This document shows, in pieces, positions 32,189-62,715 of a stretch of DNA of 64,000 nt. How positions within the stretch are numbered: position 1 is the stretch's first letter; every line of letters begins with the position of its first letter. Both the position numbers and the translations under genes were made by a program. Source of the DNA: Octopus sinensis (Eukaryota); the NCBI RefSeq assembly GCF_006345805.1, contig NC_043000.1:123752001-123816000 (forward strand), read 5' to 3'. The notes beneath the pieces were generated by a model. The model was not told where the DNA came from and did no database searches. It saw only the letters and a program-made list of their open reading frames with translations.

Positions 32189-32313
32189 TTATTTCTGGGG
32201 ACAGCTCAGCTCATCGCTGCCATCAGTACATTCTCTTGTGCCGTCACATCTCCAAGACAATGGCACGCACTCTGCTATTTGGCTACATTGGAACTGGTGT
32301 GAAAGGCAACTTC
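32189..32313 (-). CDS. LDLa-repeat protein, terminal coding exon (module 7 plus stop)
   Basis: ttatgcattccag| acceptor; (G)SCLSHQFQCSQIAECVPLSWRCDGTRECTDGSDELSCPQK*; six Cys and DxSDE; TAA at 32191-32189. Not shown in frame in the ORF track. Confidence 0.9.
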
Positions 32314-33132
32314 CTGGAATGCATAAAAGAAAAGAAGTGTTTCAGTTATATGACATTTTTTATATTACCGGATGGACATTTGGGGACAGAAAGGGTTGTA
32401 AATATTATTTAGTTTAATGTTATCAGAACTTAGAAACTTCAAGAGAACGTGAATTCAAAAATCAATTTTTTAATGGTTGAACTCAAAGCAGATAAAGCTA
32501 CAAATAATCCTTTCTACTATAAGCACAAGGCCTGAAATTTGGTGGGAGGGGTCAGTTGATTAGATCAACTCCAGTATGCAACTGGTACTTAGTTTATCGA
32601 CCCCAAAAGGATGAAAGGCAAAATCAACCTCAGTGGAATTTGAACTCAGAATGTAAAGACAGATGAAATACTGCTAAGCATTTCGCCTGGCATGCTAACA
32701 ATTCTGCCAGCTCAACACCTTGATAAAACTACAAATAATGTGTAAATTTTGGGTTAAAAAGACCCCTTGGATAGAAAAATTCTATTATTTATAGTTCCAT
32801 CTACTTTGAATTGAAACATTAAAACAAAAAAAAAGATATTATTTGGTTTATACTTTTAATGGAAGATGTTGGAAGAGAAGGAAAAAGATGTGAAGTAAAG
32901 AAAAAAGACTGTAAAGGAAGAAAATACAGACAAACAACAACAAAAAGAAAACAACAAGAAAATGAAGGCATAGGAGTGGCTGTGTGGTAAGTAGCTTGCT
33001 TACCAACCACATGGTTCCCGTTTCATTCCCACTGCATGGCACCTTGAGCAAGTGTCTTCTACTATAGCCGCAGGCTGACCAAAGCCTTGTGAGTGGATTT
33101 GGTAGACAGAAAATGAAAAGAAGCCTGTCGTA

Positions 33133-33207
<75 letters not shown>

Positions 33208-33225
33208 GTGTGTGTGTATATATAT

Positions 33226-33306
<81 letters not shown>

Positions 33307-33329
33307 TATATATACATACATACATACAT

Positions 33330-33406
33330 ATTTGGAATAATCATTAATTTCACCAAGTAGATTACATGCCGAAATCTACTTGGTGAAATTAATGATTATT
33401 CCAAAT
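33330..33406. other. Perfect 34-bp inverted repeat with 9-nt loop
   Basis: atttggaataatcattaatttcaccaagtagatt / acatgccga / exact reverse complement. Confidence 0.92.
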
Positions 33407-33636
33407 TAATTAATTTCACCCTATATTATTACTGATAACCATAATTCATCCCAGTAAATGACCGCAACATCTTGTCTTGGCTACACGCTGGTGGGAAGGG
33501 GTTGGTGACACAAACTTTCATTCACATTTCGAATTTGGTGATACTGGTAACGGTTTTAGCTCGCTCTGATACTGAGTTGAGATGATGCCTTCTAGTATCT
33601 CGAAATTTAATATACAATTATTCATAATTGTAGTGT

Positions 33637-33727
33637 CCTACGCTGATGAGAAAAAAAGTTGGGTAAGTCATAATTATCTAATTCTTATGATTTCCTAAAA
33701 CTTAATTTCGAAACGTACGTCCGTAGG
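33637..33727 (+). ncRNA. Type-I hammerhead ribozyme, canonical core, 60-nt stem II
   Basis: Stem I CCUACG/CGUAGG; CUGAUGA at 33643-49; stem II 33650-33709 closed by G-C; GAAAC at 33710-14; palindromic ACGUACGU stem III; GUC cleavage triplet at 33719-21. Confidence 0.88.
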
Positions 33728-33910
33728 TGACTTAAAATTGTATGATAGATTGCCGTCATTTCCTTCTCTCTTGCCTGTCTGTGTTTACCTTTCAAGTGCT
33801 GCGGTTTTACTGAGATCTCCCTTTTAGTAGAAAGAATAGCTATAACTCTTTGACTGCTATTTCTAAATTCGGTGTGTGGTGAAGCAAATCGTTGCTAAAC
33901 CCTTAATTAC

Positions 33911-33985
<75 letters not shown>

Positions 33986-33989
33986 GGTA

Positions 33990-34222
33990 TGTATGTATGT
34001 GTGTGTATGTGTTTGTGTGTATGTGTTTGTCACCACCACCACCACCCATGATGTTGGTGTGTTTACGTCCCCGTTACTTAGCAGTTCGGCAAAAGAGACC
34101 AATAGAATAAGTACTAGGCTTACAAAGAATAAGCCCTGGGGTCGATTTGCTCAACTAAAGGCGGTGCTCCAGCATGGCCACAGTCAAATGACTGAAACAA
34201 GTAAAAGAGTAAAGAGTAAAGA
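33990..34222 (+). mobile_element. SINE family B, 3' half
   Basis: Homologous to 8790-8995. Confidence 0.75.
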
Positions 34223-34589
34223 GTATGAAGGCAATCAAAGAAAGAAAGAATACAAGAAACATTAAAGAATCTTTCATCTTTTACTTGTTTCAGTCACTGA
34301 ACTGTGGCCAGGCTGGGGCACCACCAGTACTTATTTTTAAATCTGATACATGTTCTATTGGTTTCTTTTGCTGTACTGCTAAGTTACAGGGACAGTTATC
34401 AAGTAATAGTGGTGGGGGGAGGACAAGCTCAAACACAAAGACACGCGCACACACACACACACACATATTGGAAGAGTTACCAGCACCATGATGATTCATG
34501 TTGAGTATCAAAATGCTGATATCATGACTGATGCTCAATGCTCTGTGAACACTGAAAAGACTGTAAGACATGACAGGGACAGTTGCAAT

Positions 34590-34905
34590 GGACAGCAGTA
34601 AGGGGCACATGAGGCATTCTGGCGGCATTTGCACACCAGAATTCATCCTTACATCTTTGAACAGGAACTTAGACTCAATTCAGACAGCCATGTGAAGCTA
34701 CTGAAGACTTGTCAATCCCTTGTCGGAGAGGATTGCTACTGGAATACTCTATGAGTAACAGCAGAATTCAACTCCTTGCCATACCTCCAGAAAGAGTCAG
34801 AAGCTGTTATCAGAGAATTTCTAACTTAATTGGCCCCAGTTTCTGGCCTCTTAATTCCCTTGATTGTAATCCCATTGATTACTATGTGAGGGGCATGGTT
34901 GAGAC
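34590..34905 (+). mobile_element. Tc1/mariner-superfamily transposase relic
   Basis: QQNSTPCHTSRKSQKLLSENF...FWPLNSLDCNPIDYYVRGMVE, a decayed QQDxAPxH / WPPNSPDxNPxDY. Ends ~45 bp from an LDLa exon donor. Confidence 0.7.
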
Positions 34906-34950
34906 CATTGATTCTGTGATTTTGTGATGTTAAGAAACATTTTCTCTTAC

Positions 34951-35094
34951 CATTTCCTAGAAGGGAGAATGAAGTGTATATACAACCCATTTCATCAATG
35001 CCATTTTGGCAATCCGATTGTTTATCACATTTCCATTCCACTGGAATACATGTTTTGTTGTCACATCGAAATTGGTTCTCATTGCAAAGTGACC
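34951..35094 (-). CDS. LDLa-repeat protein exon, module 6
   Basis: ttgttatag| and |gtaag; 144 nt, phase 1-1; SLCNENQFRCDNKTCIPVEWKCDKQSDCQNGIDEMGCIYTSFSLLGN. Confidence 0.92.
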
Positions 35095-35540
35095 CTATAA
35101 CAAACACAAAAAACGGGAAACATCAATTAAATTAGTAAATGAGATCTAATTATAATGAAGTGTTGGAGGATTAAGGAAGCCAAGTCTACTTCTTGTTTTC
35201 TTTTCAAAACTGTGTTTTCTTTCTACTTTTTCTATTTCTGTGAATGTGGTGGGAATTATATTGGCTAAACTGGCATGTCATTTAGAAAACAGATGACAGT
35301 TCACAGACAACAAATATGTGATCCAAGCATTGTAGTAATTTATTTAGATATGATGTAATACTTTGGAATATATTATAATGTATTTGAAACAAATTTGATT
35401 GCAATAATCTCTTTTTCAAAACTATATTTTGAAGTGATCTGATTATAATAATATACTTTGGAATTAATTAACAGCAATATAAAAGGAACAGCACATTTTC
35501 TTTTTATTATTTTTAAACACACATGCACATGCATGCACAC

Positions 35541-35578
<38 letters not shown>

Positions 35579-36846
35579 ATACACATACAGAATAGTATAG
35601 AAGCAAAGATTTCTCAGATGTTACGTAATTTCATTCTAAGATCTACAGCTGGTTAAAATTACAAATAACATCATTCATTCAGTTACTTAATATATAAAAA
35701 TACATAATTGATTTAAATGTGATGAGTGAACCATTTCATCAGGAAATAAACGTGTGTGATGAGTGACTTGCATTTGTATTTCATATGTTGATATATGGAT
35801 TGTTTGTAGTAACTCTTTTGATAACAACCCTCCTGAGATTACCTCTGGTTCTCTGATACAAACTTCCAGCTCTAAAGGGATCTAAATTAAAAGCTTCCAT
35901 CAAAATTGTATATTAAGTTGTGTTCCAAACACCAGTTTGTTAATAACAAAGTTATATTAGTAAATTCTTCTTTGTTTTCAATAATTAATTTAAATAAAGG
36001 CTGTGTATTTCAACAGAAATATAATAGCAAAAGTCCTAATGTGTATCATACATGTATAACGTGAGTTGTGTGAACAATTGATGTTATGGAGGCTGATATT
36101 TAATATATGGAAGTATGTTGTGTGGATTGTTTTGTATTATAATGAGATTATTTATCGTGGGTAAGTTTTATGTTATTTTATTGCATAGTCATTATATAAG
36201 ATGCGTGTGGTGTGCAAAGAATCTACTGTTTCAGTTGTGCATGTTCAAAGTTGTGAGACCTAGAATGAATTTTATAGTTTACTTTGTCATCATCACCATC
36301 ATCATCATCGTCATCATCATCATTTAACATGTGTATGTATGTATGTATGTATGTATGTATGTATGTATGTATGCATGCATGTATGTATGTATGTATATGA
36401 TGGACTCTCCCACCAAAGATGAGGAATGACCATTCAGCTTTTGCCGAATGACCTGCACAAATGATTTGTTTATAATGACCAAATGCTTGCGCCACACATT
36501 AGCTCATTCTCTCCATCAAATTGACGTTGACTGAACAGGAGAATTGTGTGCCATGTATCAGGTGCCAAAGGGATCACAGAGCAACATGAAATGAAGTGTT
36601 TTGCTCAAGATCACAATGCACCACCTGGTCTAGGAATCGCAATCACAGTCACTGGATCATAAATGCAACACCCCAGTCACTAAGCTATGCAGAGTTTTCA
36701 TTAGGATAATACAAACAGATTGGTATGCACTCTGAGTCCTCGAACTGGTATGCCACTAAAATTCCAGTTTCAACTGCGGTTTAACATGCAGTTTCACAAC
36801 TGTGTTTTTAAAGTGGCTAGAAGTGGCTTCCCCTTGAGCCAATATT

Positions 36847-37100
36847 TATAGATTAAAACAGAAATGAAGTGGCAAACAGTTTGGCAAGACTTGACAAAGA
36901 CATTTAATTTAGTTATATGATAAAAAGATATACATAGTCTCTAACAGCTGTTTCTAAAATAACCCAGCTGTTGGAATACTGGAATATTCTAGAAACAGTT
37001 AGAGATTACATACACTATTTTATAATTTATACATCTAAATTAAATGTCATGGTCAAATCTTTCCAAACCATTTGCATCTTCATTTCTGTTTTAATCTATA
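36847..37100. other. ~255-bp imperfect palindrome (fold-back element)
   Basis: tatagattaaaacagaaatgaag ... cttcatttctgttttaatctata; inner arms gacatttaatttag/ctaaattaaatgtc and ctgtttcta/tagaaacag. Confidence 0.8.
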
Positions 37101-38151: not shown

Positions 38152-38182
<31 letters not shown>

Positions 38183-38185
38183 AAA

Positions 38186-38225
<40 letters not shown>

Positions 38226-38239
38226 GAAGAAGAAGAAGA

Positions 38240-40875
38240 AGAAAGAAAAAACACACACAGAAGAAAAAACACACAACGAAAAGGCCCCCTGGATTGACAG
38301 AATATCTACAGAACTGGACCCCTTAGAAGAGCAAAAGTGGGAGGGTGTCAAGGTAGAAGATATAAGATCTGCTCTCAGGAGGTCAAGCAAATGGAAGTCT
38401 CCAGGAAAGGATAAAATTCCTAACTTCTGGCTGAATGCCTTCCCAGAGAGCCATGAACTGCTAACAGAACTATACAATGATGTTCTGCAACACCCTAGTA
38501 GGATGCCTCCTTGGCTAGTTAATGGGTTAACATTCCTGCTTCCAAAAAGTGAAGAAACAAATGAACCAAAAAACTATAGACCCATAACCTGCTTAACAAC
38601 TATGTACAAAACTCTAACATCTGTCCTGACGGAATATACCTATAGTTTTTTAACAGACAGCAGCATATTCCCTAATGAACAGAAAGGATGTAAACGTGGA
38701 TCCTACGGCTGTAAAGACCAACTACTCATCAATAAGATGATCTTAGAAGATTGTCACAAACGACACAAAAACTTATCAATAGCCTGGATAGACTATAAAA
38801 AGGCTTTTGATAGCCTACCACATAGCTGGATTAGGAAATGCCTTGAAATGTATAAGATAGCACCAACTCTGCGAAACTTCTTGACTGTAAGTATGAGATC
38901 ATGGAGAACCACACTAACTCTGAACAGTGACAGTGAATCCCTAAATGCTGGTGATGTAAAAATTTCGTGTGGCATTTTCCAGGGTGACTCACTGTCACCA
39001 CTCCTCTTTTGTTTATCCTTAATACCTCTCTCAAAGTTGCTCAATGACGCGCAGTACGGGTATAAAATGTTTGATAAAAATATAATCATCTCGTTTACAT
39101 GGATGATTTAAAGCTTTTTGCAAAAAATGATCAACAACTCAAGGGCTTACTAGCGATAGTCAAACAATTCAGTGACGACATCAGAATGCAATTCGGCCTC
39201 GATAAATGTGCAAAGGCTACCTTTATCAAAGGAAAAATGACAGAAACATCTAACGTTAACCTTGACCAACAGAATGTCATAAAAGAACTAGACCCAGCGG
39301 AGAGCTACAAGTACCTAGGGGTAATTGAAGGGAACGGAATAAGGCATTCAGAGATGAAGGAAAGGATCAGGAGAGAATGCTATCGAAGAGTGAGAGCAAT
39401 ACTCAAGACAGAGCTGAATGCAAGAAACAGGATCGAAGCAATCAATGCATTAGCTATACCAGTCGTGACTTACAGTTTCAATATTGTTAACTGGTCAATT
39501 ACTGAAATATGTCAGCTCGACAGAAAAATAAGGAAACTGTTGACAATGCATAGAATGCACCACCCTAAGGCAGATACAGAACGACTCTATCTGCCAAGAA
39601 AAGAGGGAGGCCGTGGTCTTTTGCAACTGGCAATAACAATGAAGATTGCTACAATTGGCCTAGACACCTACCTGAAAAACTCTGAGGACTGGATGTTAAA
39701 ACTTGTCTCAAAACATGAAAACAAGAAAGCATCATACTCAGTAACAAAACAGGCAAAGGAATATCTAAGTGAATTCCGAATACAACCAATTTCGGAATTA
39801 GAGATAGACATACAAGAAACAAGCACAGAAAAAGCTAGGCGCATGAAAACCCGTGCCAAAACTGCGGCCTTAGATATTCTGAATAATAAATGGCAAGAAA
39901 AACCTCTCTACGGCAAATACCCAAAGAGAGCGAATAATGCAGATATCGACAAAGCCCTGACCCATCAATGGCTAATGGCCTCTGGCTTAAAATCTGAAAC
40001 AGAGGGGTTTATCATAGCAGCTCAAGATCAATGCCTACCAACAAGAAACTACCAGGCCAACATATTAAAGATCAGAAGCAGTCCAACGTGTCGTGTATGC
40101 AAGCAACAAAATGAAACCATTGACATGTGGTCTCCAAGTGCAGTCTTCTAGCGCCTACAGAATATCTCAACAGGCACGATAGAGCTGCACAATATATTCA
40201 CTGGGTAATCTGTAAAAACCTGGAGTTGCCCCATGAGAAAAACTGGTGGGAACACAAACCACCCCCAGTGCTTGAAAATGACCACATCTCACTCCTCTGG
40301 AACTTCACCATTCAAACTGACAGGAAGATAGATGCAAATAGGCCAGACATCATATTGAAAGACTTCAAACAAAGAACATGCCTCCTCATTGATATGACTG
40401 TCCCAATCGATATAAACGTATCTGTCAGGACCTACCAAAAACTGAGCAAATATAAAGATCTTGAAATAGAAATCAGCAAAATGTGGAAGCTGAAGACTAA
40501 AACAATACCTGTTGTCATAGGTGCCCTGGGAATGATAGCAAAAGGGGCTGATAGCTACCTAACTCAGATACCAGGAAACCCAAAAATGGCAGAAGTTCAA
40601 AAGATAGTGCTCATGGGAACTGCTCATATCCTACGCAAAATACTCTCTATGTAACCTCAAGGTTTAAAACAACCATAATTTTCGGTTTAAAAAAAAAAAA
40701 AAAAAAAAAAAAACTTTTTTTTTTTAGACATTCATTAGTACAACATCCCCACTCCCCAAATATATGGCACACTAGGCATAACAACAACATGAACTTCCAA
40801 CCCTGTTGTCTCTTGAGGTCTCTGGGTGAGACTTGGAGCCAACTTGTACAAATATAAAGCAAAAGTCAAACATAG
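38240..40875 (+). mobile_element. 5'-truncated R4/Dong-clade non-LTR retrotransposon (RT plus CCHC plus restriction-like endonuclease) in an (AAT)n tract
   Basis: RT motifs KNYRPITCL, QKG, WIDYKKAFDSLPH, GIFQGDSLSP and YMDD (39096-39107). C-terminal CRVC..E(T)ID(H)..S.C, RHD, RPDI..D and KLSKY; stop at 40654. Two single-base frameshifts (~39085, ~40124). (AAT)n on both sides (38191-38223, 40876-40896). Confidence 0.92.
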
Positions 40876-40898
40876 AATAATAATAATAATAATAATTT

Positions 40899-42476: not shown

Positions 42477-42567
<91 letters not shown>

Positions 42568-42599
42568 TAGATAGATAGATAGATATAGATAGACAGACT

Positions 42600-42690
<91 letters not shown>
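42477..42690. repeat. (AGAT)n microsatellite
   Basis: Direct reading; a similar tract is at 53010-53190. Confidence 0.92.
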
Positions 42691-43849: not shown

Positions 43850-44089
43850 CACCTGTGCAGGTGGCACGTAAAAAGCACCCACTACACTCGCGGAGTGGTT
43901 GGCGTTAGGAAGGGCATCCAGCTGTAGAAACACTGCCAGATCAGACTGGAGCCTGGAGCAGCCCCTGGCTCCCCAAACCCCGGTCGAACCGTCCAACCCG
44001 TGCTAGCGCGGAAAATGGACGTTAAACGATGATGATGATGATGATACATACATACATATGCATATACACATACATGCATATACATATAC

Positions 44090-44175
<86 letters not shown>

Positions 44176-45000
44176 CATCTGGCACCTGTGTCGGTGGCAC
44201 ATAAAAACACCATCCGAAGACCCGGCAAGACTAGTCAGGCCATAACCCGTGGCCCCTACCTGGGACGTAGTCAGTCCACCTGTGTATACCTTCCTTCTTG
44301 TGACACTTGTGAAGACCTGTTGAGGCAAGTGAAAATCAATCAAAATAGATGAACATCAATAGAATTTGTATCTTTGTGGTACCAGTGCCGGTGGCACACA
44401 AGAAAACCATCCGAACGTGGCCGTAGCCAGTACCACATCGACTGGCCTCCGTGCTGCGGGCACGTAACAAACACCATCCGATCGTGGCCGTCTGCCAGCC
44501 TCGTCTGGCACCTGTGTCGGTGGCACATAAAAAACACCATCCGAGCGTGGCCGTTCGCCAGCCTCGTCTGGCACCTGTGTCGGTGGCACATAAAATCACC
44601 CACTACACTCTCGGAGTGGTTGGCATTAGGAAGGGCATCCAGCTGTAGAAACACTGCCAGATCTGACTGGCCTGGTGCAGCCTTCGGGCTCCCCAGACCC
44701 CAGTTGAACCGTCCAATCCATGCTAGCATGGAAAACGGACGCTAAATGAATGATGATGATGATGATGATATATATATACACCTCTGGAAATATGCTGTGA
44801 ATGCGAAGATCCAACAGATAACGTGAGTTCATGGTTGTTTCCTGCACCAGCTTCACATAGAGGCGTTAGGAAGGACATCCAGCTGTAGAAACACTGCCAG
44901 ATCAGACTGGAGCCTGGTGCAGCCTCCTGGCTTCCCAGACCCCAGTCAAACCGTCCAACCCATGCTAGCTTGGAAAATGGACAGTAAATAATGATGATGA
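43849..45000 (+). mobile_element. Cluster of three RTE 3' ends (43849-44045, 44177-44770, ~44780-45000)
   Basis: Three family-C tails; the middle copy has the same 3'UTR units as 11682-12870. Confidence 0.8.
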
Positions 45001-45374
45001 GGAGGAGGAGGATGACATATATATATACTTTCTGCATTTTCTATATGCTGCTATCTCATTTTTTTCACATTTCTTCTATTTTTTTGTTTTTTATCTAGTT
45101 TCAGCTCCCAAGCTGTGGCCATGCTGGGGCAATGCCATTTGGTGTTGCTACATAATTTTACTTCATGAATGCCTTTTAGGAATTGCCATTTGGTGCATGA
45201 GAGAGTTTGATGTAGCCGCCCTCATCTGCACCTCCTGCCGCGAAGTTGGTTCATCTGGGACATCTGACAGGAAAGGGTCCAGCTTTATTTTGAAGACATC
45301 TACATCCACCCCATGCAGGTCTCTCAGGTCCTTCGGGAGGATATTAAAGAGCTGTATTATTCAGTTTTTAATGA

Positions 45375-46669: not shown

Positions 46670-46813
46670 AGAAAGAAAACGTTGGTGAAAACAAATCCTT
46701 TTCACAAATGCTTTCATCGCTTCCATCCCGGCAGTCTGTTTCTTCATCACATCGCCAGTCGATGGGAATACAGCTTTTGTCTTGGCATGCAAACTGGTTG
46801 CCGTTACACACTG
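46670..46813 (-). CDS. LDLa-repeat protein exon, module 5
   Basis: aatatag| and |gtaagt; 144 nt, phase 1-1; (A)[47 protein letters not shown]. Confidence 0.92.
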
Positions 46814-47984
46814 CTATATTTAGAAACAGAGAATAATAGATACAGCTGGATGACAAAAATAAATTGATCGAGTAGGATAATGATAACCTCATTAATCTAA
46901 ACTAATAAATAATTCATTAATTAGTCTGCAGTAATTGCAGGCATGGCTGTGTGGTAAGAAGGTTGCTTTTCAGCCCAACCCATGGTTTCAAGTTATGTCC
47001 CACTGTGTAATTCTGGTGGGGTGGGGTTGGCAAGTATCTGCTATTACCTTGGGATTTAATAAATGAAAACTGAAAGAAGCATATTGTGTATATATAAATA
47101 TGTGTAGCCAACTGGCTTCCATGCCAGTGGCATGTAAAAGGGCACCATTCAAGCGTGATCGTTACCAACGTTGCCTTACTGGCACCTGTGCTGGTGGCAT
47201 GTGTAAAAAGATCGAGTGAGGTTGTTGCCAGTACCGCCTGACTGGTCCCGGTGTCAGTGGCACGTAAAAAGTACCCACTACACTCTCGGAGTGGTTGGTG
47301 TTAGGAAGGGCATCCAGCTGTAGAAACTCTGCCAAACCAAGATTGGAGCCTGGTGCAGCCATCTGGTTCGCCAGACCTCAGTCAAAATCATCCAACCCAT
47401 GCTAGCATGGAAAGTGGACATTAAACGATGATGATGATGTGTGTATGTATGTGTGTGTGTACATGTGTGTATATTACTGTCTCTTTGCCTTGACTTTATG
47501 TGATGCTTGTAAATGAGTGTCACCGTCATACAAGCTGTGTCACTCATTTCAAATCTTCTGTGGAAATATGTTTGGTCATGAAGAAATAGTAATTTCAAAA
47601 TTTGGCACAAGGCCAGCAAGCTTGAGACAGTGGTGGGGGTAAGTCGATTACATCAAATCCCAGAACTGGTATTTATTTTATTGACCATGAAAAGATGAAA
47701 GCAAAGTTGATCTTGGCACAGTTTGAACTCAAATCATAAAGCATTTTGACCAGTGTGTTAACAATTCTGCCACTTCATTGCTTTGTCATGAGGAAATATT
47801 ATCTTACTTTGAGGGCTAATGACAGGAAGATCATCCAGGTGGAGAAAACCCACCACAATTAATTCCATCCAGCCCATGCAAGCATGGAAAAGTGAACAGA
47901 AAGGCATAGAGGAGAATGTAATTTGGAGTATATCATATGTAGGGAAATAAATGGTGGTCATGGCCTTTGATCATAGGCTTGGTC

Positions 47985-48330
47985 AATCATCATCATCGTC
48001 ATTTAATGTCCTCTTTCCATGCTAGCATGGGTTGGACGATTTGACTGAGATCTGGCGAACCAGATGGCTGCACCAGACTCCAATCTGATCTGAAAGAGTT
48101 TCTACAGCTGGATGCCCTTCCTAATGCCAACCACTCCGAGAGTGTAGTGGGTGCTTTTACGTGCCACCAGCACAAGGGCCAGTCAGTTGGTACTGGCAAT
48201 GGTCACGCTCAAATGGTGCTTTTTATGTGCCACCTGCACAGGAGCCAGTCCAGCGGCACTGGCAACGACCTCGCTCGAATGATTTTTCACGTACCACCAG
48301 CACAAGTGCTAGTGAGGCGACGCAGGTAAC
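47985..48330 (-). mobile_element. RTE 3' end, family C
   Basis: Reverse complement of the family-C tail with three hairpin modules. Further copies at ~47105-47440 (+), ~50628-50900 (-) and ~57425-57670 (+). Confidence 0.78.
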
Positions 48331-48676: not shown

Positions 48677-48740
48677 CAGGTCTGATATATTAGCTAAATA
48701 GCAACAATTACAGTTACAGAGAGAGAAGCCTTCTCCTTAC

Positions 48741-48881
48741 CTGTTGTTGGAAGTTCAGTTGTATTATATACACACCCGGATTCATCACTTCCATCATCAC
48801 AGTCCTCTTGTGTGTTGCAAAGAAGACGAATTGAAAGACATTCCCCATCAGAGCAAGCAAATTGTTCTATTCCACAAGAAT
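48741..48881 (-). CDS. LDLa-repeat protein exon, module 4
   Basis: tctttgcag| and |gtaagg; 141 nt, phase 1-1; [46 protein letters not shown]. Not shown in frame in the ORF track. Confidence 0.92.
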
Positions 48882-50626: not shown

Positions 50627-50667
<41 letters not shown>

Positions 50668-51757
50668 GTTTAACGTCCATTTTCCATGCTAGCATGGGTT
50701 GGATGGTTCAACTAGGGTCTGGGAAACCAGGAGGCTGCACCAGGCTCCAGTCTGATCTGGCAGTGTTTCTACAGCTGGATGCCCTTCCTAACGCCAACCA
50801 CTCTATGAGTGTAGTGGGTGCTTTTTATGTGCCACCAGCACAAGTGCCAGGGGAGGCTGGCAACGACCACAATCGGTTGGTGCTTTTACGTGCCTCGGCA
50901 CAGAAACCAGTCAATCATATCCGTGATAATATGAAAAGGTCCTTTGAGTTTACATTTTACAGAATTTACTGGGTGCATTTTTCTTGGCACCAACACTAAA
51001 GAGGTAGCCACGTCCTTGACATTATTACTTCAATGGAACGTATGAACAGCACTTGTCTCTTGCTTCTGACAATGCAAAGACAAGATGATGATAATCCTAA
51101 CCAGGACTGACTTCTGCCACTTAAGGACATCCTTACACTTATCAAGGGGTTTCTCTTGTCCAGGATTCCCTAGGTCAGAGAAAAGACAAATCTAGTATAT
51201 CTGTGAGAGAGATATCATATGTCGGGGCTGCTGCCAAAAGAGTCACCAATGCTGAACTCATCCACTTTAATGAGGGCTCCACCCCATTTGTAAGTTTGAT
51301 TGATGGCTGTCGACACTTTGTTCATCCACCCTTGTTGAGAGGCAATTTATAATTTTTTTTCTTTTTGTCATGATATCAAACCACTCTTTACATTCTGAGG
51401 TGTGACCCTGAAGTCGTATTGCCAGTTTAAATGCTGACATCCCAACTATGAAACAGGTAGTACTGGTTTAATTAATTACCAACATCAGATCATTTTGTTT
51501 TGTTTTTTTTTTGTTTTTTGGGGACTTTTTGCTGTTTTTTAATCTGATCTAACGAAAAGAAATGTGTAAAACAATAAAAAACAATTATGTGTAAAACAAT
51601 AAAAAAACAAAGAAATATCTGATAATGTAATTATTTGTAGGTCATTTTTGTTAATGTTGTGCAAATAGTGATTGTTTTAACATAAAGTATGTTTACGTAC
51701 AACAATGGTGTTAGGTCACTGAAGGCAGTGAAAGAATGTTTTCAAAGGGATACATAC

Positions 51758-51928
51758 GTTGGTTATTAGAAGCGGGTGTACTATGATTGTTTAAAGCAAG
51801 CGTACTATCTTCTTTAGTACATCCCTCCTCGTCACTGCTGTCAATGCAGTCGTTTATGCCATCACATAGTTTGTCACGGTTCACACAACTTCCATCAGCA
51901 CACTTGAACTGGTTCATATTACAGTGTT
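51758..51928 (-). CDS. LDLa-repeat protein exon, module 3
   Basis: ttattgcag| and |gtatgt; 171 nt, phase 1-1; (E)[56 protein letters not shown]. Confidence 0.92.
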
Positions 51929-53010: not shown

Positions 53011-53055
<45 letters not shown>

Positions 53056-53068
53056 TAGACAAACAGAC

Positions 53069-53126
<58 letters not shown>

Positions 53127-53158
53127 GTAGATAGATAGATATACAGGTAGATAGATAA

Positions 53159-53191
<33 letters not shown>

Positions 53192-54196
53192 TAGCCTGAA
53201 CAGGCTTCAAGACATTTTCTGTCTACCATATTCACTCAAGACTTTGGTCAACTTGTTTAAGGTGCTGTTCAGTGGGACTGAACCTGAAACTATATGCTCG
53301 CCAAGCAAACTCCTTAACCACAGAGCCATGCCAGCCACTACAGACACTATACATAATTACATTACTGGCACCAGTGACTGTCCCATGCATTGAGGTTTAC
53401 AGTTGAGTGCAATGTCCTACGTAGCACAATTGTTGCAGTCAATAGTGTAAGTGATTTGAGATTAGTGTAGATCTGATACTTTAGAAAAGAAAAAATATAT
53501 TATGTGAGAAAAACACTTGTTTCAGTCCATCTGTTGATAATTTCAACAAATTCAAATAAAACAACTTTTGTAAATGGACTTAATAATCAATAACACTGAT
53601 ATTAAAGAGATAACTGCCTGTTATTTCCTTTTGAATCATTTGCAAGAATGATTTTATTACAGATATAAAGAAATATAAGTCAGGGAGAAGATGCACTCTT
53701 ATACCTGTTAGTAGAGTGTGTATATTGTCTGAATTTTATAGTGTTAATTATCCTTCATGGCTGGTCTTACCAATAGGTTTCATGTGAACTTATATAATGG
53801 AGAGTTAGGCAACAAACCAGTTATATAATGCACGCATGTCAGAGATAACTGTCATAGAAGGGGAAATGGCAACTGTTCTTTCCCCTTCCATGTCGGCTAT
53901 CTCTGACAAGTGTATATCATATATCTGGTTTATGGTAGCAAGCTGGCAGAATTGTTAGCACACCGGTTGAAATGCTTAGCGGTATTTCATCTGCTGAGTT
54001 CATATTCCACCAAGGTCGATTTTGCTTTCCGTCCTTTTGGGGTCGATAAGTTAAGTACCAGTTGCATACTGGGGTTGATCTAATTGACTGGACCCCCAAA
54101 AAATTTCAGGCCTTATACCTGTAGTAGAAAAGATTATATATATGGTTTGTTGCCTCACACTCCATTATATGATTAGCATAAAGAAATATATATATA

Positions 54197-54752
54197 TATA
54201 TCATCATCATCGTCATCATTGTTTAACGTCCACTTTCCATGCTAGCATGGGTTGGACGATTTTGATTGAGGGCTGGCGAACCAGATGGCTGCACCAGGCT
54301 CCAATCTTGATCTGGCAGAGTTTCTACAGCTGGATGCCCTTCCTAATGCCAACCACTCCAAGAGTGTAGTGGGTGCTTTTTACGTGCCACCAGCACGGGG
54401 GCCAGTCAGGCGGTACTGGCAATGACCTAGCTCGAATCTTTTTACACATGCCACTGGCACAGATGCCAGTAAGGCGACGCTGGTAACGATCACGCTCGAA
54501 TGGTGCCCTTTTACGTGCCACCGGCATGGAAGCCAGTTGGCTGCTCTGGCAACGATCATACTCAGATGTTGCTCTTGGCACCCTACTAGCACGGGCACAA
54601 GTGCCAGTAAGGCAACGCTGGTAACGATCACACTCGAATGGTGCCCTTTTATGTGTCACTGGTACGGAAGCAGGTTATCCACTCTGTCAACGATCACACT
54701 CGTATGGTGCTCTTTGCGCCCAGCTAGCACGGATGCCAGTCATCGAATTTGA
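54197..54752 (-). mobile_element. RTE 3' end, family C, with ~6 divergent hairpin modules
   Basis: Family-C tail plus modules, ending at gattttgatttc. Confidence 0.78.
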
Positions 54753-54774
54753 TTTTGATTTCATATATATATAT

Positions 54775-54836
<62 letters not shown>

Positions 54837-56397: not shown

Positions 56398-56478
<81 letters not shown>

Positions 56479-58514
56479 GAAAAATAAATTCAAAAAAGAA
56501 CAATTCAAACTTTTTGAGAGGTCCAAAAAGAGAGAAAGAATGATTTCTAATAAAGATTCATCATATTCATAAAAAACAGCCAGAGCAAGTATTAAGAATA
56601 TGAAAATAGTAGTTGAAAAATATCGTTAAAGGTATAAATATACCATAAACGATTATAGAAAAATGGAGGAGAAAAAGATGTTGCATCAAAATTAGATTTA
56701 ATACAAAATAGGATTCAATACATATGCATTTCCAAAGGACAATACAAATATGTAGGAAAAAATTATAATCATAGTAATTATAATTAAATTTATGCATTGT
56801 CATTCTTATCAGCGTGAAGAATTTTTGGAAGGACATCAAAAAAGGTTTAATAAAATAAAGTAAATTAAAATAAGATACAATAAGGGAGAATACAAAAGGG
56901 GTAATAGGGAAAAACCAGATATTTACAAGCAAGTTGTAAAAGGGAAAAAATAACGGTAAAATAATAGTGAGAGAGACAAAAGAGAAAAAAGACAGACATA
57001 TCAATGTGTATGCACGTCTATATGTGCAAACAGAATGATTAGATTTGGCTTTTCTGTTTCTCCTGACTTATTTAGGATTATTTCTTCCTTTAACAATAGA
57101 AAACTAAATCTTTACTACAAGAATTTTACCTCCTCTACTACTGATACTAATCCCAATTATTCAAATAGCTCTGTATCTTCTACCAAAGGTTCCCATACTC
57201 ACACAAACACTTCCTCCTCAATAGCAAGACACATATTTCTGCCTCTCTATTTCTCTGTTACACTCTAACTGTCCATCATCTGATACTGGATCACCTCCTC
57301 TAATGCTCTCTCTGTTGTGGAAGGACACCTGTCTCTCTGTTTCTTTGTCACACTCTAACCTTTCACCTTCTGACACACATTCTCTTCCTCAAATGCCCCT
57401 ACCCCTCTCATGGTTCCTTGTCTTGTGAGTTACATGGTTACCCTGCCAGTGCTGGTGCCACATTAAAAGCATCCAGTCCACACTGCAGTGTGGTTGGCAT
57501 TTGGAAGTCCACTCTGCAGAGTTTTTGGTGTTAGTAAGAGCATCCAGCCATAAAATCCCTGCCAAGACTGACACAGTAGCCTAGGGTAGTTTTTCTAGCT
57601 GACCAGCTCCTGTCAACCTTCCTACCCGTGTATGCATGGAAGATGGATGTTAAATGATGATGATGATAATGATGTATATCATATTTTCACACACAGCTGT
57701 TATAAAGATCATAATGCATGTATCTGTTATTACTGTATGTAAAGTTATAGAAAACCAACAAATGAAATAATATTTGAATTTTTTATATTTTTGAAAATAA
57801 TTATATTTAATGTTTGTATAAGTGCTTATTCCATAATTAGATATTGTAACTATATGAGCAGAATATACAGTATCACACACAAGCACACACACAATCATGT
57901 GTATATATGTGTGTGTATGTATGTAAAACATGTATCATCGTCATCGTCGTCATCATCATCATTTTAATAATGTGCTTGTATGGTAGTAGTTCTGTGCTTG
58001 CATGATAGTAGTGATAAGGAGATGATGATGATGATGATGATGAAGATGATGTTGATTACGATGATGATGTAGAGACAATCTTTTGTCACTCTTTTGGTCA
58101 TAAATGCAGTGAACCAGAGACAAGATTATTGAAAACTTTTAACCAACAATATTATTGTTTGCAAAAATGAAAGATGAAATACATAAATAACAAAACTAGT
58201 CTAGCCCTCCCACATCCACCCTATGCCTACCCTACCCTTCCTAAAGGAAAATGAAGGAAAAAAATCGATATTTCATAAATATTCATATTTTATGATTATT
58301 AGAAAAATTCCTTTAGAGAATATTATTGAAATAACTGTTGCTATTCTAACGCTTGACTGTTTCACCAATATTGCATATATTGGGAAAACATGTATTCCTA
58401 ACATATACAACAAGAACAACAGTAATCAAAATAGATGTGCTTGAGAGTGTGTGTGTGTGTGTGTTGTGTGTGTTGTGTGTGTGTTGTGTGTGTGTGTGTG
58501 TGTGTGTGTATGTA

Positions 58515-59312
58515 CAGTACTTTGCAAAAATCTTTGGCCACTTTATTGTAAAGTTCTACTAATTGCCAACTTATGAACGGATGTTTCACATTGTATTTTT
58601 TACAGATGAAACATTGGCCCTGTTGGAATCATTTCCATACCTAATCATTATATTTTGTAGTAGGGGTTCTGAATGAGAGGGGAAGATGTGAGATGACCAC
58701 CAAAAATGGCCATGCAAAAGTTTCTGGCCACCTCACATAAACCATCAGGATACATTCAGTGTTTTAAAACAGAAAAATGTTTATAATGAAAATTTATTAC
58801 ATAATGTTCATGTCAAGAAGTTACTGTACATTGTTAATATTTTGTGTGGCTTCCCTTAGCTTGAATAATTGCTTCAATGTGCCTGGGAAGAGATGCGTAT
58901 AAATCTTTCACCATCTTCACAGGTATGAGATGCCATTCTCTGTGGCTGAGCTCCCATAACTCGAGATTGTGTGGATTCTTCTGACGAACTTTTCTCTTTA
59001 GTTCTGTCCATATTTGTTTGATGATATTTAAGTCAGGGCTCTGAGCTGACCAATCTTTCAATACGGTAACACCTTCATCAGCCAGATTCTGTTGTGTTGC
59101 ACACAATCTGCAGCATGGAGCTCCGTCATGCTGAAAAGCCTCACCTTTATCCAAGTCTGGTATCAAATTGTCCTTCAGCAACTGGATGCAAATGGAACTA
59201 TTCAAGTTACCATCAATTTTAACCAACTTTCTTGAACCATCACTTTTTATGTATACCCAAAACTTCACTGTTTTCATCGTGTAACATGAGTCGTTTCACT
59301 TTCTTGAAAGCC
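58515..59312 (-). mobile_element. Tc1-like (DD34E) transposon 3' part with IR/DR-type end
   Basis: TA|CAGT terminus; direct repeats tgcaaaa(a/g)t(c/t)t(t/c)tggccac at 58523 and 58713. ORF 58834-59277 has FQHDGAPC, WSAQSPDLNIIKQIW (catalytic Glu changed to Lys) and AKGSHTKY*. Confidence 0.88.
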
Positions 59313-59326
59313 TTCTGACAAATTCT

Positions 59327-59557
59327 TATTTCTTTACTGCTCACAAAGGGCTACACACAGGGGGAACAAACAAGGACAGACAAACAGATTAAGTTGATTA
59401 TATCGACCCCTGTGCGTAACTGGTACTTATTTAATCGACCCCGAAAAGATGAATGGCAAAGTCGACCTCGGCAGAATTTGAACTCAGAACATAGCGGCAG
59501 ACGAAATACCGTTAAGCATTTCACCCGGCGTGCTAACGATTCTGCCAGCTTGCCGCT
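59327..59557 (-). mobile_element. SINE family A with 14-bp TSD
   Basis: ttctgacaaattct at 59313-59326 and 59558-59571. Confidence 0.88.
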
Positions 59558-59752
59558 TTCTGACAAATTCTGGCTGATGAAGGTGTTACCATATTGAATG
59601 ATTGGCAAGCTCAGAGCCCTGACTGAAACAGTCATTTGACAGGATGTGTATATATATATATGTATATATTATTTAATAACAGCTTGAATTGGCCCCATGC
59701 AACTTAAAGACATATGATAAAGAAATAAAGAAAAGAAAATCTATTAACTTAC

Positions 59753-59899
59753 CTCTGATTGCATTAGATGAAAAAATTGCTAAGTTTGGACATTCATCTT
59801 CATCACTGCCATCAGGGCAGTCACTTTCACCATCACAGTGCCATGCTCGTGGAACACAGGAGCCATTTGTGCAGAGGAATTGGTCGATATAACACCTGG
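59753..59899 (-). CDS. LDLa-repeat protein exon, module 2
   Basis: ctttccag| and |gtaagt; 147 nt, phase 1-1; (S)[48 protein letters not shown]. Not shown in frame in the ORF track. Confidence 0.92.
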
Positions 59900-60007
59900 C
59901 TGGAAAGTAAGAATGGTAATAAGTCTTAGAATGTTTATTTTATCTCGTAATCCTTTTGATAACCCACCCAAGACAGCTTCAGGTTCTGAGATACATGTTT
60001 TCTAGAC

Positions 60008-60305
60008 ATAGGAGTGGGTGTGCGGTAAGTAGCTTACGTAACAACCACATGGTTCTGGGTTCAGTCCCACTGCGTGGCACCTTGGGCAAATGTCTTTTAC
60101 TATAGCCTCGGGCTGACCAAAGCCTTGTGAGTGGATTTGGTTGATGGAAACTGAAAGAAGCCGGTCGTAACTTAGCAGTTCGGCAAAAGAGACCAATAGA
60201 GTAAGTACTAGGCTTACAAAGAATAAGTCCTGGGGTCGATTTGCTCGACTAAAGGTGGTGCTCCAGCATGACCACAGTCACATGACTGAAACAAGTGAAA
60301 GAGTA
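60008..60305 (+). mobile_element. SINE family B lacking the internal microsatellite segment
   Basis: gaagccggtcg|taacttagc junction deletes the middle of the family consensus. Confidence 0.8.
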
Positions 60306-62571
60306 ACATTTCATTTTAATAATGGCAAAGTTATTTAACTAAGTTCTTCATTATTTTCAAAATTAATTGAAACAGAGCTAATATATTTTCATAGAAATGA
60401 GGTAATAAAACGGTTACGAAATATAGGATTCAATGTTGAAATTTCTTTTCTTGTTGTTTTACAGGTAAATAGAGATGATGCGGGGGTGTAAACTACAGTC
60501 AGTCTAAATAATAGAAGCAACTAATGTTATGTGCTAGATGGCATGTTAGGCTTGCTTCCCTTACTGTTTAAAGGTAAAGAAATTGTAAGTAGTCAGGTTA
60601 TTGTTATATTTTAAACCCTAGTTTAAACTTTAGAAGACCCTCTGTGCTGTACCCAAAGACGATGCATATAACTCTTCTTAACTTAATTTATCTAAACTAC
60701 TTTGCTGAGACTTAAAATTGGTTTTCTGATTGCAATGTGTGTTTGAAATCTTCAATAAATGAAAATTTCAAAACCACATTTTGATAAAAATATATTAAGA
60801 TTAAAATGTTTAAGAATTTTCTATCCTGTGTAGACTTTAACAATTGCTTTCTTTGAGTAAAAGTTACATACTCATAACTAATTAATTAGAAACTGTTGTA
60901 GAGGAGCAATAGGAATGCTATCCAGGAACAGCAGGAATGACACCCAGCTATAAAAAAAATTCCTGAACAATATGCAAATATATAAGTTTGTAAAAACAGT
61001 CTCACCAATACTAAAAAAAACTGATGTTAAATAGAAACAAAAACAAGTGTTTAATACTACTAGAAAGTGTTATATATGTTGGTCATAAATAATGAACTCA
61101 CTGAATAAACATGATATATGTACACTATAAAGACATGTTTATTTTGCACTTGTCACAAATTAGATTTAACTTAGTGGAATAATGGTAGAATGCTATTGAT
61201 TTTGTTTTATTCAACATTTTCAGTCAGGCAAACGTCTTTGTGTGAATAGTTAATCTCAATAAACAATCTGTTGTAGACAAAAAGAGACATCGAGAAGAAA
61301 ATAAATGAAAGAAAACACATTTTAAAATAAAATAAGCAAAAAGAACAATAAATAAATGAATAAAAAGCAATGGTGAATTTGATAGTCCACTTGATACATT
61401 TAATCTATGTTAAATTCTATGTTAAATAAAGCCTTCATTTGAGAATAAATAACACTCTCTTAGTGATCGAACTACAAATAACGATTGTTTATATATATGA
61501 TGGTCTTTTGAGAGGATACCAGTAATTACTAGATAAATAGAACAGAGAAGGTAGATTCAGGGATCAAGAGAAGAGAGAAGATGGGTGGCTACAGGTCAAA
61601 TGAAAGGAGAAAATACTGCCATCAAAACTTTACTTTCTCACATCAACAATAGAAGTTTGGAAGGAGTCTGATACATTATGGTGATTAAGGGGTTGCACTC
61701 ACAGTTGCAAAATCAAGGTTTTGATTCTCAGATCAGGTGATGTATTGAGTTCTTGAGCAAAATACTTCATTTCATGTTACTTGAGTCCACTTAGTTGTAA
61801 ATGACAAACCCTGTGATGAACTGGCATCTCATTCAATGGCAATGTGGTGATCTCAGTCACTTATGCACCATGGAAACTGAGTAACTAACCCCATGATTTC
61901 AAGGACTTGAGACAGTAAAGCCAAGGAGACTTACTTTACTGATACAAGATGGGAACTTCTATATGGCTGCTGCTTGACTTGTGAAAATAGCATTTAAATT
62001 TTCACAATTCACACACCACTATCTTAAAGAAAAAAAGAAGGACATGATGGATAATATTGTGAATCTTTGGTCATTGGTTGGTTCAGTCAGAGCTGATCTG
62101 AGTTCAAAAACAACAATTACAACAATTCCAGTTGCACAACCATGGGAAACAACCAAACCAAGAAAGTTACTTGAAAATGGCAACCAGAACTCCCTTAAAC
62201 CACACCCTATTCTCTTAAGAAAAAAAATTAGAAAAAGAACAGAAAGATACTTTTAATGGAAAGTTCATGGCTTAAGCATCTTTGAGTGTAGGTCAGTCTG
62301 ATCTCAGCTTACCTAGAAGATAAACAATACTAGATATAGGGCTAGAAATAGCAGCAAAATTGAAATCACACCCTATCATCTTGAAAAAATAAAGGATATG
62401 TTGGATAATGTGGTCTAAGATTTACATAGATTTACAAAAAGACAGAATGGCCATGATCTGATTGACCAGAGCTGACCCAGAGCAAAACATCCACAACAAC
62501 AACATCAAGATAATCTACAGCTGTTGTCTGCTAATTAATAAATTAATGTGAGAAGAGAAAGTGATACAAAC

Positions 62572-62715
62572 ATATGCTATGGGTTGGTTCCTCTTTCTTC
62601 ATTGGACATTCCTCTTCATCACTGCCATCTGCGCAATCTTGGTACTTGTCACAGTGCCATAATGCTGGAATACACACATTGGTGTTGCACCGAAACGAGT
62701 CATCTGCACAGTTCA
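62572..62715 (-). CDS. LDLa-repeat protein exon, module 1 (first within the window)
   Basis: gcattgcag| and |gtttgt; 144 nt, phase 1-1; [47 protein letters not shown]. Not shown in frame in the ORF track. Confidence 0.9.

What the first reader, a model, noticed from the sequence alone, without database searches (positions are those of the whole stretch)
32189..62715. Gene ending in an array of at least 7 LDLa modules with no downstream membrane anchor or catalytic domain
Seen: seven minus-strand exons with AG/GT ends splice in frame (1016 nt, ~338 codons). Each encodes one six-Cys LDLa module with an acidic DxxDE end; the six internal exons add a 9-20-aa linker, several Ser/Thr/Asn-rich (sequons NHS and NTT in linkers, NGS and NKT in modules). 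The last module is followed by PQK-stop. Known: in LDLR/LRP/VLDLR, SORL1, GRL101 and corin-type proteins the LDLa cluster is followed by EGF/YWTD, FN3, LRR-7TM, protease or TM segments. Inference: this is a secreted or N-terminally anchored multi-LDLa ligand-binding or matrix protein, possibly lineage-specific. The N-terminus is outside the window, so identity is open.
Basis: partly seen in the sequence, partly recalled or inferred. Interest (0 to 1): 0.7.

Follow-up and report, generated by a model that had tools for sequence, protein, structure and literature searches.

The report
Octopus protease-less corin-like membrane receptor
The seven exons are real and form the 3' end of an annotated but unstudied octopus gene for a cell-surface protein, anchored by its N-terminus, that resembles the non-catalytic stem of the protease corin and ends in ten LDL-receptor-type binding modules; it is an interesting domain variant, not a new kind of protein.

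Summary
Seven minus-strand, phase 1-1 AG/GT exons (1016 nt) each encode one LDLa module (Pfam E 3e-77). The spliced peptide is identical to residues 756-1093 of RefSeq XP_036358313.1, uncharacterized protein LOC115210576 of Octopus sinensis, including the PQK-stop.

The full 1093-aa protein has these parts in order:
- a conserved cytoplasmic tail
- a single N-terminal signal-anchor
- a SEA domain with a GSISV motif
- a Ser/Thr/Asn-rich stalk
- a Frizzled cysteine-rich domain (CRD)
- ten LDLa modules, then the stop.

It has no EGF/YWTD, SRCR or protease domain, and none is present in the 32 kb downstream.

O. bimaculoides has the same C-terminus. So do four independent transcript assemblies from an unnamed species at about 52% identity. 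dN/dS is 0.09 for the LDLa array.

The closest architecture found is a scallop corin-like type II serine protease (TM-SEA-Fz-LDLa-SRCR-trypsin). O. vulgaris annotators named the orthologue "corin isoform X2".

I read it as a non-catalytic, N-terminally anchored, Ca2+-dependent binding and possibly endocytic receptor. That function is inferred, not shown. It is a new variant of a known kind, of moderate interest.

The parts
62572..62715 (-). Exon encoding LDLa module 4 of 10 plus linker (protein residues ~756-803); phase 1-1
   Evidence: 100% tblastn match to P0121 residues 756-803
59753..59899 (-). Exon encoding LDLa module 5 plus linker; NGS sequon inside the module
51758..51928 (-). Exon encoding LDLa module 6 (no Trp before Cys4; DSSDE motif) plus a 22-aa Ser/Thr/Asn linker with an NHS sequon
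48741..48881 (-). Exon encoding LDLa module 7 (Leu for Trp, Asn for Asp after Cys4, in both lineages) plus linker with an NTT sequon. Read-through of its donor gives [15 protein letters not shown]-stop, which is the C-terminus of the O. vulgaris 971-aa model.
46670..46813 (-). Exon encoding LDLa module 8 plus the conserved linker [13 protein letters not shown]
34951..35094 (-). Exon encoding LDLa module 9 (NKT sequon; Asn at Cys5+2; IDE tail) plus linker
32189..32313 (-). Terminal coding exon: LDLa module 10, then Pro-Gln-Lys and TAA (32191-32189). No usable GT donor lies before the stop.
   Evidence: same end in O. bimaculoides
32188..32193 (-). AATAAA hexamer overlapping the stop codon, a candidate poly(A) signal. 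The next one is at 32013.
   Evidence: sequence only; usage not tested

Best explanation
**Shown.** The window holds the last seven coding exons of Octopus sinensis LOC115210576. The gene spans 163 kb and encodes a 1093-aa protein. The parts of the protein, in order, are:
- a conserved ~93-aa cytoplasmic tail
- one signal-anchor helix, giving type II topology with the N-terminus inside the cell
- a juxtamembrane SEA domain with a GSISV motif where SEA domains self-cleave
- a poorly conserved Ser/Thr/Asn-rich glycosylated stalk
- one Frizzled-type cysteine-rich domain
- ten LDLa modules, with the stop 3 residues after the last.

This is the order of parts found in the stem of a mollusc corin-like type II serine protease, but the scavenger-receptor and protease domains are absent and the LDLa array is longer.

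**Inferred.** The protein is a non-catalytic cell-surface receptor.
- The membrane-distal LDLa array, whose Ca2+-cage residues are intact, captures ligands that display basic residues.
- The Fz CRD offers a second, possibly lipid- or Wnt-type, binding site.
- The conserved tail motifs (YVDV/YIDI of YxxPhi type; NPGF/NPGY of NPxY type) drive clathrin-mediated uptake.
- SEA self-cleavage allows the ectodomain to be held non-covalently and shed.

**Confidence by part.** Gene identity and architecture about 0.95. A non-catalytic binding receptor about 0.6. An endocytic mechanism about 0.35.
For: **Identity.**
- The spliced peptide is identical to the C-terminus of XP_036358313.1.
- The gene range is 162,844 nt.

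**Topology.**
- There is a single hydrophobic segment at 94-118 and a polar N-terminus.
- In-frame stops lie upstream of the ATG in the transcript contigs.

**Domains.**
- SEA scores 34.5-37.7 bits against a cut-off of 26.4.
- Fz scores 45.8-46.7 bits against a cut-off of 32.1 when the segment is scanned alone.
- The Fz segment also matches PDB Frizzled-6/3/4/8 CRDs at E 4e-9 to 1e-6.
- There are 10 LDLa modules.
- The acidic Ca2+-cage positions are kept, or conservatively changed, in all ten. Module-specific deviations are shared by both lineages.

**No protease, SRCR, EGF or YWTD.**
- None is found in the proteins.
- None is found in the window's 32 kb downstream.
- The 3' UTRs of the transcript contigs from four sequencing runs are non-coding.

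**Selection.** dN/dS between two related transcripts is 0.20 overall: LDLa 0.09, Fz 0.04, tail+TM 0.09, stalk 0.43.

**Tail motifs.** They are conserved across five sequences.

**Corin-like relative.** Scallop OWF53862.1, named 'Atrial natriuretic peptide-converting enzyme', has TM-SEA-Fz x3-LDLa-SRCR-trypsin. BLASTP to P0121 gives E 2e-26 over the Fz+LDLa region.
Against: - No expression, localisation, cleavage or binding data exist for this gene. Literature searches for its identifiers returned nothing.
- The endocytic motifs are short linear motifs and could be chance or serve another role.
- The LDLR family carries NPxY in type I tails. Its use in a type II tail is untested.
- The SEA call covers only model positions 12-76 of 106. 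The profile of the SEA segment found no PDB SEA domain.
- The AlphaFold model is of low confidence, mean pLDDT 38. Its beta-alpha-beta-beta-alpha-beta order is only suggestive.
- Descent from a corin-like protease by loss of the catalytic end is not demonstrated. Independent exon shuffling would give the same architecture.
Confidence: 0.6

Rival explanations
1. The functional form is mainly soluble or matrix-bound. SEA self-cleavage or juxtamembrane shedding releases a Fz-LDLa10 ectodomain that acts as a secreted binding or matrix protein.
For: - A GSISV motif lies at the SEA self-cleavage position and is conserved in all species.
- Corin and matriptase ectodomains are shed (PMC10520876 and PMC5567652 abstracts).
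- The mucin-like stalk carries many sequons.
Against: - The signal-anchor and a strongly conserved cytoplasmic tail (dN/dS 0.09) are kept. That would be unnecessary for a purely secreted product.
- Cleaved SEA halves normally stay associated (general knowledge of MUC1 and matriptase).
Confidence: 0.15
2. It acts chiefly through the Frizzled CRD as a membrane-tethered modulator of Wnt or another lipid-modified ligand, in the manner proposed for MFRP. The LDLa array serves as a spacer or co-receptor contact.
For: - The Fz CRD is the most constrained part: dN/dS 0.04 and 64% identity between distant lineages.
- It aligns to the Wnt-binding CRDs of Frizzled-6/3/4/8.
- MFRP is a non-catalytic type II protein with LDLa and an Fz CRD (PMC5215506).
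Against: - The ten LDLa modules are almost as constrained (dN/dS 0.09) and keep their Ca2+-binding residues. They are therefore unlikely to be a mere spacer.
- No Wnt-binding data exist. CRDs of this fold bind varied ligands.
Confidence: 0.2
3. It is a true corin-type protease whose SRCR and protease exons lie further downstream and were missed by the gene models. The O. vulgaris record is named 'atrial natriuretic peptide-converting enzyme'.
For: - The O. vulgaris annotation carries that name.
- The order TM-SEA-Fz-LDLa is shared with a scallop corin-like protease.
Against: - The TAA follows LDLa10 within an exon that has no usable donor before the stop.
- O. bimaculoides has the same end.
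- Transcript contigs from four sequencing runs of a distant species stop at the same place and have a non-coding 3' UTR.
- There is no trypsin, SRCR or GDSGGP/AAHC signal anywhere in the window, including the 32 kb downstream.
- No called gene lies within 10 kb of the gene ends.
Confidence: 0.03
4. The array is a decaying or non-functional remnant, a pseudogene or annotation artefact.
For: The O. vulgaris model ends in intron read-through after exon 48741, which shows that gene models here can be imperfect.
Against: - All 60 Cys of the ten modules are conserved, with no frameshifts or stops.
- The modules are one-to-one orthologous between lineages at ~57% identity.
- dN/dS for the array is 0.09.
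- The gene is expressed in four RNA-seq runs.
Confidence: 0.01

Closest known systems
Corin / mollusc corin-like type II transmembrane serine proteases (human corin; Mizuhopecten yessoensis OWF53862.1)
   Same: - Both have type II topology with a cytoplasmic N-terminal tail.
- Both have an Fz CRD followed by an LDLa cluster. Human corin has 2 Fz and 8 LDLR modules (PMC7605860).
- The scallop protein also has a juxtamembrane SEA with a G-S motif and an S/T-rich linker before the Fz domains.
- O. vulgaris annotators named the orthologue after corin.
   Different: - The octopus protein has no scavenger-receptor domain and no trypsin-like protease domain. It ends 3 residues after the last LDLa.
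- It has one Fz and ten LDLa modules.
- Sequence similarity is at domain level only, 26-28% over Fz+LDLa.
MFRP (membrane frizzled-related protein)
   Same: It is a non-catalytic type II transmembrane protein whose ectodomain combines LDLa repeats with a Frizzled CRD (PMC5215506). It is a precedent for a stem-only relative of type II proteases.
   Different: - MFRP has two CUB domains and only two LDLa repeats, with the CRD at the C-terminal end.
- The octopus protein has SEA, no CUB, its CRD before the LDLa array, and ten LDLa modules.
C. elegans EGG-1/EGG-2 (and vertebrate LDLRAD1)
   Same: - These are membrane proteins whose ectodomain is essentially an LDLa array.
[quoted passage not shown]
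- That they are type II and N-terminally anchored is my recollection of Kadandale et al. 2005, not checked here.
- The last octopus module gives a weak sub-threshold match to Pfam LDLRAD1_C (21.2 bits against a cut-off of 29.2).
   Different: - They have no SEA and no Fz CRD.
- No similarity beyond generic LDLa was detected.
LDLR/VLDLR/LRP family
   Same: - Both use LDLa modules encoded one per exon in phase 1-1.
- Both keep the acidic Ca2+ cage.
- Both have an NPxY-like tail motif.
   Different: - The topology is opposite (type II, not type I).
- There is no EGF-precursor or YWTD propeller region.

Membership tests
LDL receptor family (LDLR/VLDLR/LRP) | Cluster of LDLa ligand-binding repeats | tested here: met
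   7 modules in the window and 10 in the protein; Pfam E 3e-77 and 9.5e-105
LDL receptor family (LDLR/VLDLR/LRP) | EGF-precursor homology region with YWTD beta-propeller after the LDLa cluster | tested here: not met
   No PF00058, PF07645 or PF14670 hit in P0121 or P0122. tblastn of 240 LDLR-family proteins, and the motif scan, find nothing outside the 7 exons.
LDL receptor family (LDLR/VLDLR/LRP) | Type I topology: signal peptide, C-terminal TM and cytoplasmic tail | tested here: not met
   The only hydrophobic segment is at residues 94-118 and the protein stops 3 residues after LDLa10.
Corin / type II transmembrane serine proteases | N-terminal cytoplasmic tail and signal-anchor (type II) | tested here: met
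   Hydropathy scan; in-frame stop upstream of the ATG
Corin / type II transmembrane serine proteases | Stem with Frizzled CRD and LDLa repeats (corin); SEA next to the membrane (many type II serine proteases) | tested here: met
   Pfam Fz 45.8 bits, SEA 34.5 bits, LDLa x10; PDB Frizzled CRDs E ~1e-9
Corin / type II transmembrane serine proteases | Scavenger-receptor (SRCR) domain before the protease | tested here: not met
   No SRCR hit in P0121 or P0122 or in the window (tblastn with the SRCR-containing P0270 and P0275)
Corin / type II transmembrane serine proteases | C-terminal trypsin-fold serine protease domain | tested here: not met
   No PF00089 hit. No tblastn hit with trypsin, P0190, P0270 or P0275, and no GDSGGP or AAHC motif in six frames. 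The transcripts end with a non-coding UTR.
MFRP | Type II TM with CUB-LDLa tandem repeats and a C-terminal Fz CRD | tested here: not met
   No CUB domain. The Fz lies N-terminal to the LDLa array.
Self-cleaving SEA-domain proteins | SEA fold with a G|S[VI]xV motif between strands beta2 and beta3 | tested here: inconclusive
   The Pfam SEA hit is above its cut-off but partial, model positions 12-76. GSISV/GSINV is invariant. The low-confidence model places it between two strands. Cleavage itself cannot be tested here.
EGG-1/EGG-2 / LDLRAD1-type LDLa-only membrane proteins | Ectodomain made only of LDLa repeats | tested here: not met
   SEA, stalk and Fz CRD precede the array. The LDLRAD1_C match is below its cut-off.

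The most novel reading that the evidence does not exclude
A cephalopod-restricted gene family arose from a mollusc corin-like type II serine protease. It lost the SRCR-protease end and expanded the LDLa array. It now works as a catalytically dead endocytic or Wnt/lipid-binding receptor with a lineage-specific tissue role. One unverified lead is the 'corin' reported as expressed only in the light organ of the bobtail squid (PMC10329180).
Probability: 0.25. Interest if true: 0.5.

Novelty: new variant of a known kind. Interest (0 to 1): 0.33.

Why it matters
- **Annotation.** At least one public record calls this gene 'atrial natriuretic peptide-converting enzyme', although it has no protease domain. 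Expression studies in cephalopods that report 'corin' may in fact be reading this non-catalytic gene.
- **Biology.** It adds a clear invertebrate example to the small set of type II membrane proteins that keep a protease-type stem (SEA, Fz, LDLa) without the enzyme, as MFRP does in vertebrates. The ten modules have been kept one-to-one over a deep cephalopod split. That makes it a tractable case for asking what such stems bind on their own.
- **Limits.** It does not open a long-standing question, and the gene model was already public.

Tried and rejected
- **First homology search.** The 337-aa peptide returned only generic LDLa proteins of 209-590 aa at about 35% identity. The tool appears to filter by length relative to the query. 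Repeating with the peptide concatenated three times recovered the true 1093-aa protein.
- **Exhaustive search with the spliced peptide.** I used the Argonauta partial protein P0240 instead, which lacks the LDLa array.
- **Full-length Pfam scan.** It missed the Fz domain. Scanning the segment alone found it.
- **PDB search with the SEA segment.** It found no SEA structure.
- **AlphaFold on a 3-sequence alignment.** Mean pLDDT was 38, so I ran no fold search on it.
- **Literature searches.** The locus and accession identifiers and SRR6517992 gave nothing.
- **Rejected readings.** An LDLR/LRP fragment with downstream EGF/YWTD exons, a truncated true corin, and a pseudogene are all rejected; the reasons are in the rival explanations.
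- **tRNA scan of the window.** It found none.
Full report
**Observation**

A six-frame pattern scan finds seven six-cysteine LDLa patterns in the window, all on the minus strand. Reading the flanks gives these exons:
- 62715-62572
- 59899-59753
- 51928-51758
- 48881-48741
- 46813-46670
- 35094-34951
- 32313-32189

Every exon has an AG acceptor after a pyrimidine tract. Every internal exon has a GT donor, five of six being GTAAG/GTATG-like. All introns are phase 1, and the total is 1016 nt.

The translation is an uninterrupted 337-residue peptide ending Pro-Gln-Lys-TAA. Pfam scores seven Ldl_recept_a stretches at E 3e-77. The last exon has no usable GT donor before the stop codon. An AATAAA hexamer overlaps the stop at 32193-32188.

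**Identity**

A first homology search returned only generic LDLa proteins of 209-590 aa. That pattern suggested a length filter. Searching with the peptide concatenated three times found P0121, XP_036358313.1. This is 'uncharacterized protein LOC115210576 [Octopus sinensis]', 1093 aa. Its residues 756-1093 are identical to my spliced peptide.

The gene spans 162,844 nt in GCA_006345805.1, with no other called gene within 10 kb. The window therefore holds the last seven coding exons. The first 755 residues lie beyond coordinate 64000.

Members of the same 90% cluster are:
- O. bimaculoides XP_014785499.1: 1096 aa, 95% identical, same ...ELSCPQK end. UniProt calls it 'FZ domain-containing protein'.
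- O. vulgaris CAI9720926.1: 971 aa, named 'atrial natriuretic peptide-converting enzyme isoform X2'. Its C-terminus [15 protein letters not shown] is exactly the read-through of the donor at 48741 into the intron of this window.

The window has His at the exon C/D junction codon, as in O. sinensis, where O. vulgaris has Tyr.

**Architecture**

Parts of the protein, in order:
- **Anchor.** There is one hydrophobic segment, residues 94-118, and no N-terminal signal peptide. In the transcript contigs of the distant homologue an in-frame stop precedes the ATG. The protein is therefore type II, with the N-terminus inside the cell.
- **SEA domain.** Pfam finds it above its gathering score, 34.5-37.7 bits against 26.4. 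It has an invariant GSISV (GSINV in Argonauta) at the position of the SEA self-cleavage motif.
- **Stalk.** A poorly conserved Ser/Thr/Asn-rich stretch follows. The protein carries 21 sequons in all.
- **Frizzled CRD, residues 489-595.** The full-length Pfam scan missed it. Scanned alone, it scores 45.8 bits against a cut-off of 32.1. A two-sequence profile hits PDB Frizzled-6/3/4/8, Smoothened and sFRP3 CRDs down to E 3.5e-9.
- **LDLa array.** Ten modules follow, not eleven as I first counted.

There is no EGF, YWTD, CUB, SRCR or trypsin domain.

**Is the C-terminal end real?**

Three lines of evidence agree.
1. Two Octopus gene models stop at PQK.
2. A homologue at about 52% identity (P0122, P0244, P0248) is assembled as intron-less contigs from four separate sequencing runs: SRR6517992, SRR29271467, SRR29271484 and SRR29271455. 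It ends 4 residues after LDLa10, followed by 106-687 nt full of stops.
I also ran motif scans for GDSGGP, AAHC, YWTD and CxCxxG. Nothing turned up outside the seven exons on either strand, including the 32 kb downstream.

**Constraint**

- The ten modules are one-to-one orthologous between the two lineages.
- Module-specific oddities are shared by both lineages:
  - LA6 and LA7 lack the Trp.
  - LA7 has Asn after Cys4.
  - LA9 has Asn at Cys5+2 and an IDE tail.
  - LA10 has Glu before Cys5.
- The array is therefore old, not a recent expansion. Its Ca2+-cage positions are intact or conservatively changed.
- Identity by region between the two lineages:

| Region | Identity |
|---|---|
| cytoplasmic tail | 56% |
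| SEA | 53% |
| stalk | 25% |
| Fz | 64% |
| LDLa | 57-65% |

- dN/dS between two closely related transcripts is 0.20 overall: 0.09 for the array, 0.04 for Fz, 0.09 for tail+TM and 0.43 for the stalk. The counts are small.

**Distribution**

A profile of the N-terminal 756 residues found only P0121, P0122 and a partial Argonauta hians protein in the 5.8-billion-sequence collection. That search is limited by length and by word sensitivity.

An exhaustive phmmer search of 1.84 billion representatives with the Argonauta fragment, which has no LDLa array, gave only 52 hits. Apart from cephalopods, these are single-domain matches:
- multi-Fz proteins such as one from Montipora
- multi-SEA proteins
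- one Frizzled receptor
- two type II protease-like giants.

The most telling hit is scallop OWF53862.1, 'Atrial natriuretic peptide-converting enzyme'. It has a cytoplasmic tail, TM, SEA with an RGSIRV motif, an S/T linker, three Fz, about four LDLa, SRCR and trypsin. BLASTP to P0121 gives E 2e-26 over Fz+LDLa.

The octopus protein thus has the part order of a mollusc corin-like protease stem without the catalytic end.

**Mechanism (inferred)**

The best-supported reading is a non-catalytic, N-terminally anchored surface receptor.
- LDLa modules with intact acidic cages bind basic residues of ligands in a Ca2+-dependent way. This is established for the LDLR family.
- Here the modules sit at the membrane-distal tip, on a glycosylated stalk.
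- The Fz CRD is the most constrained domain and may bind a lipid-modified or other ligand.
- The tail carries a conserved YVDV/YIDI (YxxPhi type) and NPGF/NPGY (NPxY type). These would fit clathrin-mediated uptake, but they are short motifs and untested.
- The SEA motif suggests self-cleavage and possible shedding.

Rivals are a mainly shed or soluble form, a Wnt modulator like MFRP, a missed protease end (nearly excluded) and a pseudogene (excluded).

**Comparison with known families**

- Human corin has a tail, TM, two Fz, eight LDLR modules, SRCR and a protease (PMC7605860).
- MFRP is a type II protein with CUB, LDLa and a C-terminal CRD, and no protease (PMC5215506).
- EGG-1/2 are LDLa-repeat oocyte surface proteins that are endocytosed (PMC13042291).

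The octopus protein fails the defining catalytic feature of the type II serine proteases. It fails the EGF/YWTD and type I features of the LDLR family. It lacks the CUB domains of MFRP. It is therefore a member of none of these, but it is built and probably works like a stem-only relative.

**Verdict**

The novelty is modest. The model is already public though uncharacterised, and in one species misnamed. The architecture is a variant of known type II Fz/LDLa proteins.

Noticed in passing
window 38503-40654 (+): Three adjoining ORFs (202, 350 and 175 aa) of a non-LTR-type retroelement lie in the 11.6-kb intron between exons 46670 and 35094. Two match Pfam RVT_1, at E 7e-17 and 1e-3. The reading frame is broken, so the copy is probably dead.
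   Followed up: partly
window 58834-59277 (-): A 147-aa ORF resembles a DDE_3 (Tc1/mariner-type) transposase, E 1.6e-5 and just below the Pfam cut-off. It lies in the intron between exons 59753 and 51928.
   Followed up: partly
window 9570-9815, 11670-12880, 43850-45030, 47180-47440, 47990-48300, 50650-50900, 54190-54540, 63600-63780: A dispersed repeat family with internal ~62-bp tandem units has at least ten copies on both strands at 73-94% identity. It produces the recurring spurious ORFs such as ...FLQLDALPNANHS... in the ORF list. ARAGORN found no tRNA genes in the window.
   Followed up: partly
window 48697-48740 (-), just past the donor of exon 48881-48741: Reading through this donor gives [15 protein letters not shown]-stop, which is exactly the C-terminus of the O. 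vulgaris model CAI9720926.1 (971 aa, 7 LDLa). This is either an intron-retention isoform or an annotation artefact.
   Followed up: partly
window ~51830-51845 (-), LDLa module 6: The module carries DSSDE rather than DGSDE. In corin and CD320 this motif directs apical sorting in kidney cells (PMC7605860). It is present in O. sinensis and O. bimaculoides but not in the distant homologue, which has DGSDE.
   Followed up: partly
window 25312-25892, 33131-33331, 42477-42690, 53011-53194, and 1-1240: Long microsatellites are present: (TTA)57, (ATT)65, (TA)101, (TAGA)54 and (ATAG)46. TG/CA-rich low-complexity tracts are also present and create many spurious Cys/His/Thr-rich ORFs.
   Followed up: no
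O. vulgaris CAI9720926.1 (public annotation; orthologue of the window gene): The record is named 'atrial natriuretic peptide-converting enzyme isoform X2', although the protein has no protease domain. Cephalopod papers that report 'corin' expression, such as light-organ-specific expression in Euprymna (PMC10329180, PMC6172772), might refer to this family. This is unverified.
   Followed up: partly
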